A program made the position numbers and the translations under genes. A DNA stretch of 64,000 nucleotides, from sequence record LR535910.1. The stretch is one strand, 5' to 3'. The notes beneath the pieces were generated by a model that ran no database searches, was not told the origin of the DNA, and saw nothing but the letters and a program-made list of their open reading frames with translations. Of this stretch, positions 29,299 to 38,150 are shown one piece after another (the stretch's first letter is position 1; the number at the start of each line of letters is the position of its first letter).

Positions 29299-29721
29299 AT
29301 GAACAATATCGCGTTTGAAAAAGGCGTTGGCTTACTTCTGAACAACACCATCATCGCTGGCACTAATAACGCTAACTGGGAAGCGTTAGCACAGCGTCTC
29401 AAAGACAAGCCTGTGAAGATTGTGGTAACGAGCGAGCTGCCGTTAAACGGCACGATGGCAGACTGTGGTCCAATGTTTGCAGCGTTTAATGTCGACTATG
29501 ATTGCGGCTCCGCTTTCTTACAAAACGCCGCGTTACGTAGCCGTCTGTACAGCTGGCGTTTGTTGGGTCCAGTAAGTAAAGCCGCTGGCCAGATGGTTAA
29601 CCAAGGCACACCGATGTCGGGTGTAGAAGACCAGACTATCGCCGTTGTCGTTTCTCGCGCAACCGGCCAGCTTAACTTTGCAATCTGCTACGCGTATCAG
29701 GAGGAGGAAGCCTGTGTTTAG
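29299..29721 (+). CDS. Hypothetical protein
   Basis: AAGGAG RBS, 140 aa. Confidence 0.75.
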   Translation: MNNIAFEKGVGLLLNNTIIAGTNNANWEALAQRLKDKPVKIVVTSELPLNGTMADCGPMFAAFNVDYDCGSAFLQNAALRSRLYSWRLLGPVSKAAGQMVNQGTPMSGVEDQTIAVVVSRATGQLNFAICYAYQEEEACV

Positions 29722-30583
29722 TATCATTCAGCAAGTTCAAGCGGTCGAAGAGTGGTTTCGCAAGACGGATATTTACCAACAGAAAGCGACTGAACGTCAG
29801 TTGGTGAAGTATTACGTCACACTCGGCAGGATCTCAGCAGGTGTCGATGAACTGGATAACTTAAAGGTGGCTGCCGGTATCGGTGAATCGATTTGGACAT
29901 TTGCCGCGCTGCTACACCTCGGTCCACATTCTAACCTCGGCGATATTGTCGTTCCGTTGAGTGATGCGGTGTCTCTTCGTACTACAACTGGCACGAAAGA
30001 AGGACAACTGCAGCAGCTCATGTTAATTGCAGTCGAGACCGTTAGTGTTGTTTTGCGTGAACCAGAACCTGACCCTAAGAGTTATAGCGCGCTGCTTCGT
30101 AAGTTGATGAGACAGTATCAATTGTTGGCGTGTCGTTGCGGGCTGGAGTTTGACCGTGTTGTTTTTAATGGCCATCGTAAGCTCGTTAAGACGCCTGAAA
30201 CGACAAGCACGCTCGGCGAACTGCTCAAAGCATCGTTGCCGTTATCCGACGACGATTTGGCGAAACAAACCTATCAGGCGGTGTACAAAACCAACGAGTC
30301 AGTTCACGACATTATTGTAAATTGCCTTTTGGCCACATCGAATGATTTACAAACCGAACATAACGGTGAAGTCGCCATGCCGCAGCTATTGCTGCGGATG
30401 GAGGACATTATGAACGAAAAGCTGCAAGAGCTTCTCAAGGCGCACTTTGAACCGTGGATAGTAAGAAAACAAATGTTGTTCAATCGTAACCCTCGCGTTG
30501 ATGTTAAGTTCGATGGTAACGCTGTAAACATTTGTGCGAACGACGATTTAAGAGACATTTTGAATTTATTGAAAGGAAAATAA
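29714..30583 (+). CDS. Degenerate MazG-like protein (start moved from 29645)
   Basis: GAGGAGG RBS before GTG; EEWF...IYQQ...Q..KYY...AAGIGES resembles MazG-like helices but lacks the acidic metal ligands. Confidence 0.45.
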
Positions 30584-30585
30584 TT

Positions 30586-31623
30586 GTGAAACAGTATCTT
30601 GAAATGATGCAGAATATTCTGGATGAAGGGCATGTTAAGGGCGATCGTACTGGGACAGGGACGCTCTCCGTCTTTGGTCGCCAAATGCGTTTTGATTTGC
30701 GCAAAGGTTTCCCGTTAGTCACGACTAAAAAACTCCACCTGCGTTCTATTATTCACGAACTGCTGTGGTTCCTTAGTGGCGATACCAACACCAAATATCT
30801 GGAAGATAACGGCGTTACCATTTGGCGGGAGTGGCAAGATGAAAATGGGAACCTTGGCCCCCTGTATGGTGCACAATGGAGACGTTGGAAAGATGTGAAA
30901 CTGGTGCCTAAGAAAAATGCAGCTTTAATCGAGAAACTGCAAGATGCAGGATACGTGGATTATGGCGACGCGGACGACGGTTCACAAATGTTCGATGCGC
31001 GTGTACTTCTGAAACTACACGACCAAATCTCTAAGGTGATTGACCAACTGCGTAACGATCCTGACAGTCGCCGTATTATTGTCAGCGCATGGAATGTGGG
31101 TGAGTTGGATCAAATGGCGTTAGCTCCGTGTCATGCGTTCTTTCAGTTCTACACTCGTGAGCTGTCTATCGACGAGCGTCTTGATTGGTTTGAAAAGAAC
31201 CTTCCAGATCAATTTAACGATTCCCGCTTTAGTAATGAAGCTGTAGCAGATGACGCAGTGTTCCACGTTGAGATGGACGCACTTGAAATACCTCGCCGCA
31301 TTCTTTCATGTCAGCTCTATCAACGCAGTGCGGATTTTTTCCTCGGCGTGCCGTTCAACATCGCGTCTTACGCATTACTCGTACACATGGTAGCTCAGCA
31401 AGTTAACATGGTTCCAGGCGATTTCGTTTGGAGTGGTGGTGACGTACATCTGTACTCCAACCATCTGGAGCAGGCCAAGCTGCAGCTGACGCGTGAGCCG
31501 TTACCTTTACCGAAACTGATCATCAAGCGTAAACCGGAATCTATCTTCGATTATAAATTCGAAGATTTTGAGATCGTTGGGTATCAGTCTCATGAAAAAA
31601 TCTCTGCGCCTGTCGCTATCTAA
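30586..31623 (+). CDS. thyA: Thymidylate synthase with two insertions
   Basis: [61 protein letters not shown]. Confidence 0.97.
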
Positions 31624-31635
31624 TTAGGAGCGTTT

Positions 31636-32172
31636 ATGGTTGACAACGTCGTTCCATTCAAACCTAAAGTGGTGGTTGCTACGGACGAACCGCCGTTTAT
31701 TCCTGTCAATGGACAGAAGATCATCGAGTTTCCAGACGAACATCGTGGACAATTGCACGTTCCACAACCGGACGGGACGATGAAAGCTATCGGTTTCCCG
31801 ATAGCTGAACAAGAATGGTGGACGCTTCTGGCCATCCAGATGATGTCGCGTGGTCTGGGTGTGTCTACGGAACCTGTCGTTCGCATTAATACCGACCCGT
31901 ATATCCACGAACAAGGCAGTTGGATGGAACGACGTCGGACAATGGAGATGCAGATTAGCAAAGAAACGCTTTTGCAAATCGCAGAATCCACACCTTTCAT
32001 CCTGACCTCATCTTTTAACGGGGATATGGATGAAGACCTCTACATGCATCTTTCGGGTTTGGCAACTGAGCACCGCATTGCAGAAGAAGAGCCTATCTAT
32101 ACCGAAGCGATGATTATCCATCCGACCGGCTTAGAAGGTAATACCTTTAAACTGATTTGGGTGGAGCTATGA
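31636..32172 (+). CDS. Hypothetical protein
   Basis: AGGAG RBS, 178 aa. Confidence 0.75.
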   Translation: MVDNVVPFKPKVVVATDEPPFIPVNGQKIIEFPDEHRGQLHVPQPDGTMKAIGFPIAEQEWWTLLAIQMMSRGLGVSTEPVVRINTDPYIHEQGSWMERRRTMEMQISKETLLQIAESTPFILTSSFNGDMDEDLYMHLSGLATEHRIAEEEPIYTEAMIIHPTGLEGNTFKLIWVEL

Positions 32173-32420
32173 CTGACCGACTCAGTAAAACAATTCGACT
32201 ACCACAACAGCGTAATGTTCGCAAAGGCGATGTTTTCACGGCGGAAGAATGGGTCGCATTAAAGGCTCTGTTCCCGGACGAAACCGATTCGCATGTCGTC
32301 CAAATGGCATTGAAAGAGTTTGCAAAGAACGCTCCTGAAATGCTGCTGCGTAAGAAAGAAGAAGAACTGAATATGCTCCGTAACAGCGTAGACGTTCTCT
32401 TTAAAACAATGGAGAAATAA
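32169..32420 (+). CDS. Small hypothetical protein, possibly ribbon-helix-helix-like
   Basis: GGAG before ATG 32169; strand KTIRL followed by two helices. Confidence 0.55.
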   Translation: MTDRLSKTIRLPQQRNVRKGDVFTAEEWVALKALFPDETDSHVVQMALKEFAKNAPEMLLRKKEEELNMLRNSVDVLFKTMEK

Positions 32421-32421
32421 G

Positions 32422-33189
32422 ATGATGAAACTCTTTGCGTTCTCCGATGAATTCTACACAGTGGAATTCGACGACTACGAATACGGGTTATTAGGGGCCG
32501 TCGACATGGAAGACGCTAAACGGCAGCTTCCCACTAGCGAAATAGAAATCATTGAGATTGGGGAAACTAATCTTAGTGGGATTCTGATGCTGGGGCGGCG
32601 ACCACGACCTGCGGAACCTGAGCAGGAAAGAGAGCAAGCGCAAGCGATTTGTCTGGTTTATGAGCCGATGGACCCTGCAGCGATAGCGAAGGTGGTCGAT
32701 ACACTACGGCCACAGATTGGCGTCGCGATTGAAAATTATCGCTGGGCTCGTTTCTCAGGCGATACGCCGATATTTTCGAATAAGCACTGGTTGCTGTGTA
32801 TCAACAACGACACGATAATGGTACCGTTAACAGGGGAGAAGAATTTTGAAGATAACTTCGTCCCTGGCGAAGAGTCTGTTATCTTCGAGTATACCCATGT
32901 TATCGGAAAGCCGAGCTTCTACCAAGTTCTGATTGATGTCTTGACTCACGTCGGTCGAACCATCGAATACCACTACTGGGCACGCCAGGCGCGTTCTAAA
33001 TGGTTCTCGTTGACGTACGTCGAAGGTTGGGAACGTGTTGTTGAAAAGATTGACGGGCGCTATGAGCAGATTTGGTTCCTGAACCCGGCATTCCGTGAAG
33101 AATTACCCGCATGGGTAAAAGAAGAGGCGAGCAAGCTGACGGTTGGCTTTACTAAGCAGGGCGCGCCGTATATGGTTAACTACAAATAA
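32422..33189 (+). CDS. Hypothetical protein
   Basis: GGAG RBS, 255 aa. Confidence 0.7.
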   Translation: MMKLFAFSDEFYTVEFDDYEYGLLGAVDMEDAKRQLPTSEIEIIEIGETNLSGILMLGRRPRPAEPEQEREQAQAICLVYEPMDPAAIAKVVDTLRPQIGVAIENYRWARFSGDTPIFSNKHWLLCINNDTIMVPLTGEKNFEDNFVPGEESVIFEYTHVIGKPSFYQVLIDVLTHVGRTIEYHYWARQARSKWFSLTYVEGWERVVEKIDGRYEQIWFLNPAFREELPAWVKEEASKLTVGFTKQGAPYMVNYK

Positions 33190-33200
33190 GGTGAAAACAG

Positions 33201-33680
33201 ATGTCTATAACTCGGATCGATTATCGTGCCGTAGTAAAAGAACTGTCCAAAGGTCTTATCGAACTGGACTCCGATGAAGCCCGCAGCTGTGGCTTCCTGC
33301 CACACATTGCACTGAGTGAGTTCCGTACCATCCGTTACGGTGCCGGTCGTCAGAAGGGCGTTACAACACACACCGTTGATATGTCAGCAAAGTTCCACGG
33401 CAGCGTTCTGTATCTGGTCCACAATGAATCGTTACGAAACGAAGTAGTGGAGAAGTTCCATGAAAAGGCCGCCGGGAACAGTTGGTTGACCGTACACTGT
33501 AACTACTTGCCTGAGGGTTGGAAACACGCGACAGGTGCTGGTATATCCGGCTACGAGAAATTCGGCTTGGTTATTGTCGACGAAGCGGGTTTCTTCTTCA
33601 ACAAGTTCAGTTACGATAAAATCTATCGCAGTCTGGTTGACGTAGTAACGCCAGACGTTGTGATTCACCTGATTAATTAA
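33201..33680 (+). CDS. Small P-loop NTPase-like protein
   Basis: GAGRQKGVTT (Walker A lacking Lys) and LVIVDEAG (Walker B). Confidence 0.6.
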   Translation: MSITRIDYRAVVKELSKGLIELDSDEARSCGFLPHIALSEFRTIRYGAGRQKGVTTHTVDMSAKFHGSVLYLVHNESLRNEVVEKFHEKAAGNSWLTVHCNYLPEGWKHATGAGISGYEKFGLVIVDEAGFFFNKFSYDKIYRSLVDVVTPDVVIHLIN

Positions 33681-33692
33681 GTAGAGGAAAGT

Positions 33693-33881
33693 ATGGCTGG
33701 AGAACTCGGTCGTGGGCAAGCCACAACGTTCATGTATCGTGATGGGTTAGGTGCGGATGTAAACATGTCTCCGGATGACGAGATGGTTATCCCTGGACTT
33801 GACCCGGACGCAGGTGTGGAAGGTGGCGTTGACCCGTCGAAAGACGACGACAACTGCACTGGTGGTGCGTGCAAGATTTAA
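33693..33881 (+). CDS. 62-aa acidic peptide ending in an NrdA-type redox tail
   Basis: GAGG RBS; downstream terminator; C-terminus KDDDNCTGGACKI versus E. coli NrdA IQDDGCESGACKI. Confidence 0.8.
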   Translation: MAGELGRGQATTFMYRDGLGADVNMSPDDEMVIPGLDPDAGVEGGVDPSKDDDNCTGGACKI

Positions 33882-33890
33882 AATACGTAT

Positions 33891-33927
33891 TAGGGTGTCC
33901 ATATGGACACCCTACTTATTTTTTTGT
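33891..33927 (+). terminator. Intrinsic terminator
   Basis: Perfect palindrome TAGGGTGTCC-ATAT-GGACACCCTA followed by a T-run. Confidence 0.85.
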
Positions 33928-33943
33928 TTAAGGAGCTATCAAA

Positions 33944-34900
33944 ATGGGCGAACGTTTCATTATCCAGATTCCGTATAACGTTATTGTTGAACCTAATCAG
34001 TACCTGGCACAGATTAATGAGCTTCTGGCTGGATTCTGCCAACGTCAGTTTGTTAAACCGTGGTCCTTTGAGAAACTGTACACCCTGTGCGTGAACAGTG
34101 AAACCGGTCACACTTACGTCGAAGGTAAAGTCTTCACAGGCGACCAGCGTTTGGAAATAAATGATTTCGAAATGCCGTGGACGTTGGAAGGTGTCGAATA
34201 TCGTGGTACGGTTGATCGCCCGCGTTACGTGCCTTTGTACACCATCCCACAATGTATTACTAACGTTATGGGTTGGTCTAAAGCGCGTGGTATTCTGGAT
34301 AACGGCGTCTGGTATAGCCAAGCCACCAAACTCTACGAAGAAGACGGTGAAGCAGCAACCGGCATCAGCAAAACCAAAGAACGTCTTATCATGGACGGCC
34401 TAGGCGATGCAATGGTGGTACTGGTTAACGTCAACGCCTTGGTAGGTATGCCATCCAAGTTGGTTTCTGTCATGCTGTCCCGTGGGCGCGCACGTCTCGA
34501 AAAGAACGTTCCATTTGGCGATGCCCATCGCTTGTTCCACAAAATGCGATTGGCCTTCACGTTGATGCACGACATTGTCTATCAAGGGGCCGATCGTCGT
34601 AACCAGCACCAGGGCACTTATCGTTTTACCGAGAGTGACGACGATCTGATTATCGAATACGAAGAGCAGATGACCGTGGCACTCTATTACATGGAAGCAC
34701 TGGCGCGAGCGTACAACATTACCCTGGAACAGTGCTTCTCACTGGCTTGGGATGAAATCAAAGACCGTAAGGGTTTCCTGAACGCGGACGGTATCTTCGT
34801 TAAAGAAGCAGACATGACCGCTGCTGAAATCGAAGTAAACGGTTCCCTTACTGTAAAAGATGAGGCGCTTACCGATGGCGAAGAAACTGTTCACGGTTGA
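33944..34900 (+). CDS. MazG-like nucleotide pyrophosphohydrolase with N-terminal domain
   Basis: KLYEEDGE, DGLGDAMVVL, LAWDEIKDRKG...GIFVKEAD. Confidence 0.82.
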   Translation: MGERFIIQIPYNVIVEPNQYLAQINELLAGFCQRQFVKPWSFEKLYTLCVNSETGHTYVEGKVFTGDQRLEINDFEMPWTLEGVEYRGTVDRPRYVPLYTIPQCITNVMGWSKARGILDNGVWYSQATKLYEEDGEAATGISKTKERLIMDGLGDAMVVLVNVNALVGMPSKLVSVMLSRGRARLEKNVPFGDAHRLFHKMRLAFTLMHDIVYQGADRRNQHQGTYRFTESDDDLIIEYEEQMTVALYYMEALARAYNITLEQCFSLAWDEIKDRKGFLNADGIFVKEADMTAAEIEVNGSLTVKDEALTDGEETVHG

Positions 34901-35297
34901 TTACGATGAATACGTTGATCGTTTACTGGTCAACAATATCGTCTGGGAAGACCACGGTCTAATGCCATGGCATCTGAAACTCCTAGCGGAGCGTTCAGAA
35001 CAATGCGGTGGTTTGGAGTTCGTACTCACCGACACACCAATTCCGGTACCTCATATTGCGCCGGTAGAAAATCTGTACTTCTTCGATGCTAATGTGAAGT
35101 TATTACAGCAGGTACTCTATACGCATGACTGGCGTGGTGGTTGTCAGTTCCCAGAGAACGTTCTAAAGCTCTCTGAGCGCTTCGGCACCGACATTGCATA
35201 CTGTCAAACGTTCCCAAAAGACTTGGGACGAAACAGCGTGGTACTGTGGTATTACCCTCCGGTAAAAGACATCGTGAAAGTGATTATCGAACGCTAA
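34875..35297 (+). CDS. Hypothetical protein
   Basis: GAGG before ATG 34875; overlaps the MazG-like end. Confidence 0.7.
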   Translation: MAKKLFTVDYDEYVDRLLVNNIVWEDHGLMPWHLKLLAERSEQCGGLEFVLTDTPIPVPHIAPVENLYFFDANVKLLQQVLYTHDWRGGCQFPENVLKLSERFGTDIAYCQTFPKDLGRNSVVLWYYPPVKDIVKVIIER

Positions 35298-35352
35298 AAA
35301 TAAAAGCAAACGAGTACCCCTAACGGGGTACTCGCGTTACTTATTTTTTTTT
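35298..35352. terminator. Bidirectional terminator
   Basis: CGAGTACCCC-TAAC-GGGGTACTCG (35311-35334) with A- and T-runs. Confidence 0.85.
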
Positions 35353-35353
35353 G

Positions 35354-35905
35354 TTACGCTTGAGTCATGTCGGAGATGTCATAAACCAGACCGTTCAACT
35401 CAGTAACGGTGATCAGTTTACTGATATCGACACCATCGCTCGGAACTTCGGTCAAATAAACTTCAACCGTACCCGTCCACGCCAGTGACTTTCCATTGAA
35501 ACGCAAATTGTGTTTCGTGGAAGACGTCATTGACTCGTTTGCGTAGATCTCCGATACGTCAATCATCCAGTTATACTTAGCCTGCAATAACGGGACAAGA
35601 TCAGCAGCAGTAGATGCGCTACTACCGTCCACAGACAGCACCACGTTTTCAAACAGGTGGGCTACGTCCAATCGACGGTAAGTAAGACCCATCTTACCAA
35701 ACGTACCTTTCTCAACGATACCAGAAACATCGAGACTGGTGTTCAGTCTGGTGTACTGTTCTGGGTCAGGATCGGCTGCGGTGATGTGCGACGGGTTACC
35801 GAACGACAATTTATCGATGGTCACGCCCTTACCAGTCAGTCCGGGATTCTGGGACACGATAAGATCGTAAACCAACTCTTTTGCGGTCTTTCCAAATAAA
35901 CTCAT
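35354..35905 (-). CDS. Putative virion (tail/baseplate) protein
   Basis: L..GNP...TSL......YRRLDV..LF...WTG pattern typical of a jumbo-phage virion paralog family (recall). Confidence 0.6.
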   Translation of the reverse strand: MSLFGKTAKELVYDLIVSQNPGLTGKGVTIDKLSFGNPSHITAADPDPEQYTRLNTSLDVSGIVEKGTFGKMGLTYRRLDVAHLFENVVLSVDGSSASTAADLVPLLQAKYNWMIDVSEIYANESMTSSTKHNLRFNGKSLAWTGTVEVYLTEVPSDGVDISKLITVTELNGLVYDISDMTQA

Positions 35906-35927
35906 AATGCGCTACCTCTGTGGTGTA

Positions 35928-38150
35928 CTATCGCGCTTGTGGTAGGAAAATGTTCGCGATTTGTCGTGCCGGTATGATATCTAACGCGGCGTTGACGATG
36001 CTGCCCTGTGACCAGGCACTTGCCCAGTTCTGCGCCCAGATAGACGCGTTGATTTTAGCCTGCGCGATACCGTTGGTACGCTCGTAAAGCGTGGCAGCAC
36101 CCAACACAGACATAAATTCACTGAACTTGTTATCATCATCAAACACACCAATATCAGTTACAATCGGCATGTACATAACACGCGACAGGTCACGAATAGT
36201 TACCTGTATATCACACGACAACGGCAGACCGTCAGCACGCCACCCTAACCCACCTGTACCAAACTGGAGACTCAAGTTAGTTACCATGGCATTACGCATG
36301 GAATAACGACCACGAGAATAACACTCCAGATAGAACGGGTGCGTAAACGATTGTTTACCGGTTGCTAACGGGCAAACTGCCGCTAACCAGAACGACAACG
36401 GGACAATCAGATCCTGGAACACATCTAAGTCGTTACCCGACCAACAGCGAAGAGGAATGCTTAGCGAGATATCGTCACCTGAGGTGTCTGAGGAGTCCCA
36501 CACTTCCGGGAAGTCAATCACTGACGAGTTGTACAGCGACATAATCCCTGATAAATGCAAGAAATCGAGTGCGCCTGTAAAGGCGGACTTCAACCCAGTA
36601 ATGAGACCATCGACTGCGTCGAAACCAGTCTTACCACCAGAGAGGTTTACTTCCAAAGAACGTGCTTTCTGTGTGGCGGAGTTAACCGTGCCAGAGATTT
36701 CAGGTTCTTTGGTGGTGTTGGAGAACGAACGCCCTACGGTATCACGTCCATCAACACGCCAAGTAATCCACTGCGAACCATTGCGTATCTCCGAAGCGAT
36801 GTTCGAAGTTAACCCATCCATAGCGCCTTCTAAAATATCGATATAGTCTTTGAAGACGCTACCGACAGATTCTTTCTGGCCTTGGTCCATCCAGTTTTCA
36901 ATCTTCCCAATGTCGAGATTATTCTCATCCATTGAGTTTGCTTCGGTCTGACTTTTAGCAACCTGAGCCTGGTTCTTTTCAACCTGTGCCATACGCTCGG
37001 CAAGCTCTTTACGTTGCGCATCACCTTCGTTTTCGAAGTTTTCAGCTTTACCTCCTTGTGACTGAGCATCCTGAATGCTTCCGTTCATCCCTGCTACCAA
37101 TTCGTCTTCTTTGTTATCGACGTTTTCAAAACCGGCATCGTACCCTTTACCGGCTTTGGCTACGTATTCAAGGTTACGTAAAGAAACCTCGTACTGCGCA
37201 GCTTTCTCCAAATGGGTTGTTGAGTACGTCGCTTCCAGATAGAAGTTTCGCAAACGTCGAGCCATGTCCTCTTCGTTACTCGACTCTTTACGAATTTTAT
37301 CGATGGTTTTCGCCTGGTAGTTGGCTAATGTTTGGTAGCGGTTAATCATTCGATAGATATCGAACTCACCATCAGCTGTCCAGATTTCTGGCAGCATGGA
37401 GTACCACTCTTTGCGGTCGCCGTTGTACTTATTAGCAGTACCGCCTTTCTCAGACCCATCTACAGCATTAGCAAGCTGGAAAGTCCCTAACACACCCGTT
37501 GGTACCAATCGGCGATAAACTAACTGGGTGTTGACCATATTCTGCACAGCGCGCAGATACAAGTGCATTGTCGGTTTCACGTAGTAGTAGCGAGAAGTCT
37601 GCTTGTTCAGCACCATCTTCAACATACGTGGTGTAATTAGAATAACCGCAAAGGCAACCGTACCTACCGCGGCCCATATTGCTGCGGCGGCAACATACGT
37701 CCCCATCGCACGTAACATACCTGGGTAGTCACCTGTGCGCGCCAGATACGCTAGGTTGGAATCGTACATATTCGCGAAGAATGCAGCGACCCCGATATAA
37801 CGAGGTTTACCGAAACGACAATGAAGATAAAAACTGTTTTGGTTAATAGCTTCGTAATAGAAAGTCCCTAAACGATAGGAACCACGTTGGTCTTGACCTT
37901 TAACGTACTTTGAGTACGAGCCACGTCCCGCATCAGGTTGTGCAAAGGCACCTGTTGAACTCGGATCAGCAAACATCGTAAACTGCGGCGGCGCATTTAA
38001 CGCTTGCGAACCACCCATCGTGGTATCTTCAAACGAGAGCATCGCGTTAGAGTAACGACGCAAACCCAGGAAACGCTCATCGCGTTGTGCGGTTGTACCG
38101 CCAAACAGGCCGGTTACCCATCCTGAATCTTTTAGTTGTCTTGCTTCCAC
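35928..38150 (-). CDS. Putative tail tip/baseplate protein (ORF track start 38189; RBS favours GTG 38150)
   Basis: GAGAGG 6 nt before GTG 38150; directly downstream of the tape-measure gene, as phiKZ gp182 follows gp181 (recall). Confidence 0.6.
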   Translation of the reverse strand: MEARQLKDSGWVTGLFGGTTAQRDERFLGLRRYSNAMLSFEDTTMGGSQALNAPPQFTMFADPSSTGAFAQPDAGRGSYSKYVKGQDQRGSYRLGTFYYEAINQNSFYLHCRFGKPRYIGVAAFFANMYDSNLAYLARTGDYPGMLRAMGTYVAAAAIWAAVGTVAFAVILITPRMLKMVLNKQTSRYYYVKPTMHLYLRAVQNMVNTQLVYRRLVPTGVLGTFQLANAVDGSEKGGTANKYNGDRKEWYSMLPEIWTADGEFDIYRMINRYQTLANYQAKTIDKIRKESSNEEDMARRLRNFYLEATYSTTHLEKAAQYEVSLRNLEYVAKAGKGYDAGFENVDNKEDELVAGMNGSIQDAQSQGGKAENFENEGDAQRKELAERMAQVEKNQAQVAKSQTEANSMDENNLDIGKIENWMDQGQKESVGSVFKDYIDILEGAMDGLTSNIASEIRNGSQWITWRVDGRDTVGRSFSNTTKEPEISGTVNSATQKARSLEVNLSGGKTGFDAVDGLITGLKSAFTGALDFLHLSGIMSLYNSSVIDFPEVWDSSDTSGDDISLSIPLRCWSGNDLDVFQDLIVPLSFWLAAVCPLATGKQSFTHPFYLECYSRGRYSMRNAMVTNLSLQFGTGGLGWRADGLPLSCDIQVTIRDLSRVMYMPIVTDIGVFDDDNKFSEFMSVLGAATLYERTNGIAQAKINASIWAQNWASAWSQGSIVNAALDIIPARQIANIFLPQAR

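What the first reader, a model, noticed from the sequence alone, without database searches (positions are those of the whole stretch)
33693..33881. Free-standing copy of the ribonucleotide reductase redox tail
Seen: a 62-aa acidic, flexible peptide with its own RBS and terminator, ending DPSKDDDNCTGGACKI, with an RDG motif near the start. It lies in the thyA/MazG nucleotide cluster and no nrdA body is in the window. Established: E. coli NrdA ends ...TRDGAEDAQDDLVPSIQDDGCESGACKI (from memory); its C754/C759 pair carries electrons from thioredoxin/glutaredoxin to the active-site disulfide, and the yeast tail can act on a neighbouring subunit. Inference: a trans-acting redox shuttle that speeds host NrdA turnover to boost dNTP supply, or a decoy diverting Trx/Grx. 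Either would be an undescribed way to hijack host RNR without encoding one.
Basis: partly seen in the sequence, partly recalled or inferred. Interest (0 to 1): 0.9.

Follow-up and report, generated by a model that had tools for sequence, protein, structure and literature searches.

The report
Free-standing copy of RNR redox tail
A Salmonella giant phage that has no ribonucleotide reductase of its own encodes a conserved 62-residue acidic peptide whose end copies the redox-active tail of the host enzyme. The same kind of stand-alone tail peptide turns out to be widespread and undescribed in other phages and in some bacteria.

Summary
ORF 33693-33881 (+) encodes a 62-aa acidic peptide with its own ribosome-binding site and terminator. 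It is gene SPN3US_0234 of an SPN3US-like jumbo phage.

- **Tail match:** its last 15 residues match the extreme C-terminus of E. coli NrdA at 10 of 15 positions, end to end, with the same Cys-x4-Cys-x2-stop geometry.
- **Specificity:** a profile of the tail from 15 phages finds only class Ia RNR alpha C-termini in the PDB (E = 5.5e-4; next unrelated hit E = 5.5).
- **Conservation:** the Cys pair and the G-A-C-K residues are invariant in 16 phages of five genera, although their codons differ.
- **No phage RNR:** SPN3US and CR5 encode no NrdA or NrdB body, so this is not a split gene or a pseudogene.
- **New here:** free-standing tail peptides form a large unnamed family. It has 276 protein clusters, 40 of 95 motif sites in viral contigs, and members in Neisseria (inside the isc operon) and Rheinheimera/Alishewanella chromosomes.

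The most likely function is a diffusible copy of the NrdA tail that plugs into the thioredoxin/glutaredoxin-to-NrdA electron relay and supports dNTP supply. That function is inferred, not shown. A decoy role or another thiol partner remains possible.

The parts
33684..33691 (+). Ribosome-binding site (GAGG core, 5 nt before the ATG)
   Evidence: Read from the sequence.
33693..33881 (+). Gene for the 62-aa acidic tail peptide (SPN3US_0234 / ACQ60_gp032; phrog_38753)
   Evidence: ORF list. Annotated as a hypothetical CDS in related records. PHROG E = 3.8e-46. Homologues in 5 phage genera.
33789..33878 (+). Conserved C-terminal half (residues 33-62), holding the upstream acidic/hydrophobic-Pro-Gly motif and the tail; residues 1-32 vary
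   Evidence: Alignments A1, A2, A3 and A5.
33834..33878 (+). NrdA-like redox tail (residues 48-62), matching E. coli NrdA 747-761
   Evidence: BLASTP gives 10 of 15 identities, end to end. Profile against the PDB gives E = 5.5e-4, with only RNR alpha chains significant. Shuffle test gives 0 of 2000.
33855..33857 (+). Cys55, counterpart of NrdA Cys754
   Evidence: 16 of 16 phage homologues keep Cys, with TGC 7 times and TGT 9 times. Alignment.
33870..33872 (+). Cys60, counterpart of NrdA Cys759
   Evidence: 16 of 16 phage homologues keep Cys. Alignment.
33891..33924 (+). Intrinsic-terminator-like hairpin (10-bp stem, 6 G-C pairs) and T-run, closing the thyA-to-peptide gene string
   Evidence: Terminator scan and sequence.
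33201..33680 (+). Conserved upstream neighbour, 159 aa, with a weakly P-loop/RecA-like fold; it precedes the peptide in all five genera, directly except where one extra ORF is annotated between them (pEa_SNUABM_6); any functional link is untested
   Evidence: phrog_2586. Synteny. AF2 pLDDT 70 with only weak Foldseek hits, E >= 4.7e-3.
32422..33189 (+). Conserved second upstream neighbour, 255 aa, an orphan
   Evidence: phrog_10453. 8 relatives among 1.84 billion representatives. No Pfam domain. Model too poor to use.
30586..31623 (+). Thymidylate synthase (context gene; probable GTG start at 30586)
   Evidence: Pfam E = 4.7e-114. Start region.
33944..34900 (+). MazG-like nucleotide pyrophosphohydrolase (context gene, next transcription unit)
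   Evidence: phrog_7855, E = 2.9e-127. Record annotation.

Best explanation
The gene makes a small, acidic protein that is probably disordered. Its last 15 residues are a stand-alone copy of the flexible C-terminal tail of the host's class Ia ribonucleotide reductase alpha subunit (NrdA). In NrdA, that tail's two cysteines re-reduce the active-site disulfide after each turnover and are then reduced by thioredoxin or glutaredoxin.

I propose that the peptide enters this same relay as a diffusible dithiol. Host glutaredoxin or thioredoxin reduces it, and it passes the electrons to the NrdA active site alongside the tethered tail. This would raise or sustain host RNR turnover while the phage, which has no RNR, replicates.

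Shown: the tail likeness and its specificity, its conservation, the free-standing gene structure, the nucleotide-metabolism setting, and the absence of phage RNR. Inferred: that the peptide is disordered, that it is expressed, that it binds Grx/Trx and NrdA, and that the net effect is stimulation.
For: Sequence likeness:
- The tail matches NrdA 747-761 end to end with the same Cys spacing and distance to the stop.
- The profile of 15 phage tails hits only RNR alpha C-termini in 177,635 PDB sequences. One hit is the 25-residue R1 peptide chain 1qfn_B. From my own knowledge, that entry is the peptide's complex with glutaredoxin 1, so a free tail peptide is a competent Grx partner.
- The motif is nearly specific to NrdA: 109 of 120 sampled bacterial sites carrying it are NrdA ends.

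Conservation:
- The invariant Gly, Asp, Cys, Gly, Ala, Cys and Lys columns use 2-4 synonymous codons across 16 phages.

Context:
- The gene closes a gene string that begins with thyA.
- In another phage lineage the peptide lies next to a dNMP kinase.
- SPN3US and CR5 have thyA and thymidylate kinase genes (SPN3US also DHFR) but no NrdA or NrdB.
- The reported SPN3US burst of about 117 virions of 240 kb (PMC13282480) needs about 28 Mb of DNA, several host genome equivalents. Host RNR must therefore work during infection (inference).

Background:
- The last ~24 residues of alpha carry redox-active Cys754 and Cys759 and are disordered in crystals (PMC4728125).
Against: - No expression, binding or activity data exist. 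The SPN3US infection proteome paper was not held.
- The tethered tail has a high local concentration, so an untethered copy may add little, or may compete with it.
- Bacterial homologues occur in genomes whose NrdA already has the tail. In Neisseria the gene lies inside the iscRSUA operon, which points to a wider or different thiol role.
- A second conserved motif upstream of the tail has no counterpart in NrdA, and its partner is unknown.
- Absence of RNR was checked in only two peptide-bearing genomes. Classes II and III were excluded only by annotation.
Confidence: 0.42

Rival explanations
1. Decoy or brake. The free tail competes with NrdA's own tail for glutaredoxin/thioredoxin or for the NrdA active site. 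This would lower host RNR activity or divert reducing power, acting like a small disordered RNR regulator.
For: The same sequence evidence applies as for the shuttle model, because mimicry alone does not give the sign of the effect. From my own knowledge, yeast Sml1 inhibits R1 by interfering with tail-mediated regeneration, so small disordered proteins acting at this step have precedent. Bacterial genomes that keep both a tailed NrdA and the peptide would fit a regulator.
Against: Two checked phages lack any RNR yet must make several host-genome equivalents of DNA. Braking the only dNDP source looks self-defeating. The gene is co-oriented with dTMP-synthesis genes. Strict retention of both cysteines is more than a simple competitor would seem to need.
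Confidence: 0.2
2. A general portable dithiol arm. The tail is simply a good glutaredoxin/thioredoxin substrate. The variable and upstream parts dock it onto a partner other than NrdA. In the phage this could be the conserved 159-aa or 255-aa neighbours. In Neisseria it could be the Fe-S cluster assembly machinery.
For: The triad of ~250-aa, ~150-160-aa and peptide genes is syntenic in five phage genera. The Neisseria homologue sits between iscS and iscU. A glutaredoxin-like protein in a MAG ends in the same motif. A second conserved motif is not found in NrdA.
Against: The neighbours have no recognisable redox fold or family. Contexts differ between lineages. The motif itself is otherwise almost confined to NrdA.
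Confidence: 0.2
3. Precursor of a modified peptide (RiPP). The variable N-terminus would be a leader and the Cys-bearing end a core that the phage's radical SAM/SPASM enzyme cross-links.
For: SPN3US and CR5 each carry a radical SAM/SPASM protein. The SPN3US one was scanned, and its best NCBIfam matches are peptide maturases (CXXX-repeat target family 3e-36, PapB 1.1e-32, all below the curated cut-offs). CR5's is known from its annotation only. The peptide has a variable head and a conserved tail.
Against: The maturase lies about 60 kb from the peptide gene, whereas RiPP precursors normally adjoin their maturase (general knowledge). Bacterial and other phage homologues show no adjacent radical SAM gene. 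The core is identical in pattern to a tail with a known thiol/disulfide role.
Confidence: 0.06
4. Leftover 3' end of a lost or split nrdA gene with no function of its own.
For: Related nucleus-forming phages such as phiKZ encode RNR (PMC12571901). An ancestral nrdA is therefore conceivable as the source of the tail.
Against: No NrdA body exists anywhere in two complete genomes. The gene has its own start, ribosome-binding site and terminator. Purifying selection acts across five genera. The family numbers hundreds of clusters. There is no similarity to NrdA upstream of the tail.
Confidence: 0.02

Closest known systems
C-terminal redox tail of class Ia ribonucleotide reductase alpha (E. coli NrdA residues ~737-761, Cys754/Cys759)
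   Same: Both lie at the extreme C-terminus. They share the Cys-x4-Cys-x2-stop geometry, the acidic run before the first Cys and the G-A-C-K-I ending, with 10 of 15 residues identical. Several Erwinia-phage versions are closer still.
   Different: There is no catalytic barrel, ATP cone or any other NrdA sequence. The gene stands alone and carries an extra conserved upstream motif that NrdA lacks.
Synthetic R1 C-terminal 25-mer used with glutaredoxin 1 (PDB 1QFN, chain B)
   Same: It is a free peptide consisting of the tail. The phage-tail profile recovers it at E = 0.0027.
   Different: It is a laboratory fragment of NrdA, not a gene product. That the entry is a glutaredoxin complex is my own knowledge, not a tool result.
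Small disordered RNR regulators of yeasts (Sml1, Spd1, Hug1, Dif1)
   Same: They are small, probably unstructured proteins that act on the large subunit. Sml1 acts at the tail-dependent regeneration step (my own knowledge).
   Different: No sequence relation was seen or expected. Those proteins are inhibitors and do not copy the Cys pair. They are eukaryotic.
Phage- or host-encoded RNR reductants and fusions (T4 NrdC thioredoxin, NrdH, and the glutaredoxin domain fused to NrdB in Facklamia ignava, PMC6187632)
   Same: Each supplies or re-wires one link of the RNR electron relay (one search lists the Facklamia paper).
   Different: Those are thioredoxin-fold redoxins upstream of the tail. This peptide copies the tail itself. 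No thioredoxin or glutaredoxin gene is annotated in SPN3US or CR5.
Radical-SAM-modified Cys peptides (ranthipeptides, sactipeptides)
   Same: Small size, a variable head and a conserved Cys-bearing end. A maturase-like gene exists in the genome.
   Different: There is no adjacency to the maturase. The core equals a known redox tail. Homologues elsewhere lack a maturase neighbour.

Membership tests
Class Ia RNR alpha subunit (NrdA) | Catalytic ten-stranded alpha/beta barrel body with the active-site cysteines | tested here: not met
   tblastn of E. coli NrdA against the window and the complete SPN3US and CR5 genomes finds only the 15-residue tail. Pfam finds nothing in the peptide.
Class Ia RNR alpha subunit (NrdA) | C-terminal flexible tail with a Cys-x4-Cys pair two residues from the end | tested here: met
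   109 of 120 sampled genomic sites with the motif are NrdA ends.
Free-standing NrdA-tail peptides (phrog_38753, phrog_14561, phrog_24014 and unnamed bacterial relatives) | Small ORF (about 36-125 aa) with its own start that ends in Cys-x2-Gly-Ala-Cys-Lys-[Ile/Leu]-stop after an acidic run | tested here: met
   PHROG E-values of 3.8e-46, 6.2e-16 and 6.6e-14. 118 of 125 fetched cluster representatives end this way. 40 such ORFs lie in viral contigs.
Free-standing NrdA-tail peptides | Second conserved acidic/hydrophobic motif upstream of the tail | tested here: met
   The motif columns Leu36 and Asp37 are kept in at least 90% of 13 phage and bacterial members. Pro34 to Pro38 are invariant in 10 phage members.
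Thioredoxin/glutaredoxin substrate in the RNR relay (functional class) | Reversible disulfide between the two tail cysteines that Trx or Grx reduces | not testable with these tools
   Inferred only from the likeness to NrdA and to the 1qfn_B peptide.
NrdB C-terminal alpha-binding peptide (competitive RNR inhibitor type) | Likeness to the last ~10 residues of NrdB | tested here: not met
   A scoring matrix built from 66 distinct NrdB ends was run against 144 peptides. The median z is -0.03, and 2.8% reach p <= 0.05 against composition-preserving shuffles.
RiPP precursor of a radical SAM/SPASM maturase | Precursor gene next to its maturase | tested here: not met
   The maturase-like gene lies about 60 kb away in SPN3US. 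None is seen near the bacterial or other viral homologues.
RiPP precursor of a radical SAM/SPASM maturase | Post-translational cross-links on the core cysteines | not testable with these tools
   This needs mass spectrometry of the native peptide.

The most novel reading that the evidence does not exclude
Free-standing copies of the NrdA tail are an unrecognised diffusible component of the class Ia RNR electron relay. Some bacteria use them. Many phage lineages have taken them up, including jumbo phages that have dispensed with their own RNR, to drive the host enzyme harder during replication.
Probability: 0.33. Interest if true: 0.85.

Novelty: new variant of a known kind. Interest (0 to 1): 0.72.

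Why it matters
RNR is the only de novo source of DNA precursors, and its re-reduction step is a recognised kinetic limit. If the best explanation is right, three things follow.

- A natural gene for the tail alone would be a new way for a virus to tune a host enzyme without encoding it.
- Such genes would be a new class of small proteins in bacterial nucleotide or thiol metabolism.
- They would help explain how RNR-less jumbo phages meet a DNA demand of several host genomes per burst.

Whatever the function proves to be, the work gives a name and a testable partner set to hundreds of 'hypothetical' small ORFs, including one inside the Neisseria isc operon.

Tried and rejected
- **RDG as a vestige of NrdA.** Rejected: the score is no better than shuffles, and the Arg is not conserved.
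- **Upstream acidic motif as a copy of the NrdB C-terminal tail.** Rejected by a scoring-matrix and shuffle test.
- **Split or pseudogenised nrdA.** Rejected.
- **Recent capture from the host.** No DNA-level similarity to E. coli genomes.
- **PDB searches with the single peptide or its last 24 residues.** Nothing relevant came back. The whole-length profile A2 put NrdA only at E = 2.2, behind spurious SMAD4 hits. The tail-only profile was needed.
- **Pfam and NCBIfam.** Nothing for the peptide, its two upstream neighbours or the bacterial homologues.
- **159-aa neighbour.** Only weak P-loop/RecA-like fold matches.
- **255-aa neighbour.** 8 relatives in 1.84 billion proteins, none with a domain, and a single-sequence model too poor to search.
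- **Thioredoxin-fold gene in SPN3US or CR5.** A crude tblastn with one glutaredoxin-like sequence found none. This test has low sensitivity.
- **SPN3US infection proteome paper.** Not held in the library.
- **Cultured representative of the ~60-kb phage group that carries a peptide.** None in the phage collection.

Full report
**Identity of the window.** Bases 31000-36000 are 100% identical to Salmonella phage SPFM13 and about 94% identical to SPN3US, a 240-kb jumbo phage of the genus Seoulvirus. The finding's ORF is annotated there as hypothetical protein SPN3US_0234 / ACQ60_gp032.

**The observation.**
- A GAGG core lies 5 nt upstream of the ATG.
- A 10-bp hairpin with a T-run follows the stop at 33891-33914.
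- The peptide is strongly acidic (13 Asp/Glu against 4 Lys/Arg) and rich in Gly and Pro.
- Upstream on the same strand lie thymidylate synthase, four small or orphan genes, and then the peptide. A MazG-like gene follows the terminator.

**Is the likeness to NrdA real?**
- I fetched E. coli nrdA-nrdB from a complete genome and translated the tail.
- BLASTP aligns peptide residues 48-62 with NrdA residues 747-761 of 761. Ten of 15 residues are identical, there are no gaps, and both segments end at the stop.
- The score is about 10 standard deviations above shuffles, and 0 of 2000 shuffles reach it.
- A profile of the last 25 residues from 15 phage homologues (A3) was searched against 177,635 distinct PDB sequences. 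Only class Ia RNR alpha chains were significant.
  - E. coli R1 residues 747-761 scored E = 5.5e-4.
  - The 25-residue R1 peptide chain 1qfn_B scored E = 0.0027.
  - Two other class Ia alphas also scored.
  - The next hit, FtsX, had E = 5.5.
- I scanned one genome per bacterial species for the DNA pattern encoding Asp-x2-Cys-x2-Gly-Ala-Cys-Lys-Ile-stop. My arithmetic on the pattern puts the chance expectation at about 13 sites for the whole collection.
- The motif is therefore close to a signature of the NrdA tail of Gammaproteobacteria and Neisseriales.
- Outside the tail there is no similarity to NrdA. The 'RDG' is chance.

**Conservation.**
- tblastn finds the peptide in 72 phage records. 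All but one chance hit are jumbo phages of Salmonella, Escherichia, Proteus, Cronobacter and Erwinia.
- I read 16 copies from five genera: Seoulvirus, Derbicusvirus, Erskinevirus, Machinavirus and Alexandravirus.
- Lengths run from 47 to 97 residues, and the N-terminal parts are not alignable throughout.
- Counting back from the stop, the columns read:

| Position from the stop | Residue kept |
|---|---|
| -8 | Cys, 16 of 16 |
| -6 | Gly 13, Ser 3 |
| -5 | Gly, 16 of 16 |
| -4 | Ala, 16 of 16 |
| -3 | Cys, 16 of 16 |
| -2 | Lys, 16 of 16 |
| -1 | Ile 15, Leu 1 |

- The invariant columns use 2 to 4 synonymous codons each. For example, the first Cys is TGC 7 times and TGT 9 times, and the Ala uses four codons. 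Selection therefore acts on the protein.
- Some Erwinia-phage tails are closer to NrdA than the window's. The Phobos tail shares the whole Cys-to-Lys stretch with E. coli NrdA.

**Not a broken nrdA.**
- The complete SPN3US record has no annotated RNR, thioredoxin or glutaredoxin.
- tblastn with E. coli NrdA and NrdB finds nothing except the tail itself.
- The same holds for Cronobacter phage CR5, from a different genus.
- Gene order is kept in all five genera: a ~250-aa orphan, a ~150-160-aa protein, and then the peptide, usually followed by MazG.
- By contrast, the related phage phiKZ encodes RNR (PMC12571901). An RNR beta subunit is among the genes conserved in over half of jumbo phages (PMC13282480).

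- Among the 120 bacterial motif sites, nine or ten are small free-standing ORFs of 42-64 residues.
  - In Neisseria the gene lies between iscS and iscU, in an iscR-iscS-[peptide]-iscU-iscA-hscB cluster.
  - In Rheinheimera, Alishewanella and relatives it lies beside an amidohydrolase and a transporter of the major facilitator superfamily.
- Relatives of these genomes carry a full NrdA with the same tail.
- A profile combining phage and bacterial members (A5) finds 276 protein clusters at E <= 10 in the 5.8-billion-protein set. The listed 120 are all at E <= 3e-6, and every one that carries a name is 'hypothetical'. 118 of 125 fetched representatives end in the motif.
- In viral contigs the DNA pattern occurs 95 times. 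Fifty-one sites are ends of phage-encoded NrdA proteins, and 40 are free-standing ORFs of 36-123 residues in several unrelated phage groups. One lies next to a dNMP kinase, and others lie near exonuclease and RNase H-like replication genes.
- All members share an acidic/hydrophobic motif upstream of the tail. I tested whether it copies the NrdB C-terminal tail that binds alpha, and it does not.

**Mechanism.**
- Established background:
  - The last ~24 residues of alpha carry redox-active Cys754 and Cys759 and are disordered (PMC4728125).
  - Reductants act through these C-terminal cysteines (a paper cited in PMC6459318).
  - From my own knowledge, re-reduction limits steady-state turnover of the E. 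coli enzyme.
  - Also from my own knowledge, the isolated tail peptide forms a defined complex with glutaredoxin 1.
- The peptide keeps exactly the parts of the tail that matter for this chemistry. It is made from a nucleotide-metabolism gene string in a phage that must rely on host RNR. A burst of about 117 virions of 240 kb needs about 28 Mb of DNA.
- I therefore favour a diffusible dithiol that shuttles electrons from Grx/Trx to the NrdA active site. My confidence is about 0.4.
- The sequence evidence fits a decoy equally well. The Neisseria isc context and the conserved phage neighbours keep a non-RNR partner in play. The radical SAM/SPASM gene elsewhere in the genome allows a remote RiPP reading.

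**Novelty.** No family library names these proteins, and literature searches found no description of a free-standing RNR tail. I file it as a known functional module in a new, free-standing genetic format.

**Limits.**
- No expression or biochemical data were available.
- Absence of RNR was checked in two genomes only.
- RNR classes II and III were excluded by annotation, not by search.

Noticed in passing
window 30571-30609: The thymidylate synthase probably starts at GTG 30586, with AAAGGAAA 8 nt upstream of the GTG. Pfam profile position 1 aligns just after this GTG. Public records start the gene at ATG 30607, which loses 7 residues. The protein also has about 75 residues more than the 266-position Pfam profile.
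   Followed up: partly
window 32422-33680: Two orphan genes precede the peptide in five phage genera, adjacent to it in nearly all records read. The 159-aa product has Walker-like motifs and a weak P-loop/RecA-like fold. The 255-aa product has only 8 relatives in 1.84 billion proteins and no usable model.
   Followed up: partly
window 29645-30583 and 33944-34900: Two MazG-related genes flank the thyA-to-peptide string. The first matches MazG PHROGs only weakly (E = 1e-4) and belongs to phrog_10269.
   Followed up: no
L009:42027-44139 (SPN3US, outside the window); CR5 L149:34830-36978: A pair of radical SAM genes. The larger resembles SPASM peptide maturases (CXXX-repeat target and PapB families, below the curated cut-offs). 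Its substrate is unknown.
   Followed up: partly
L038:497-625 and L062:7768-7896 (Neisseria): A 42-residue free-standing tail peptide is encoded between iscS and iscU in the Fe-S cluster assembly operon. The same family is annotated as hypothetical in N. meningitidis records.
   Followed up: partly
L127:3297-3785 (MAG 'bacterium CG10_46_32'): A 162-aa protein with a glutaredoxin-like domain and a GDCCVxC domain itself ends in the NrdA-type tail motif. A reductant and a tail may be joined in one chain.
   Followed up: no
L152-L246 (viral contigs): Free-standing tail peptides occur in several phage groups unrelated to SPN3US, on contigs of about 4 to 260 kb. They include a recurrent 46-49-residue form on ~60-kb contigs that has no cultured representative in the phage collection.
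   Followed up: partly
window 35310-35335: A strong two-way terminator-like hairpin (10-11 bp, 7 G-C pairs) lies between the convergent nucleotide-metabolism genes and the virion genes.
   Followed up: no
Phage records SPFM5-12, 14 and 15; proteins P0002, P0005, P0007, P0008: In these records the region matches only in about 40 short pieces, and the predicted small proteins are chimeric. This looks like sequencing or assembly error in the deposited records, not biology.
   Followed up: no
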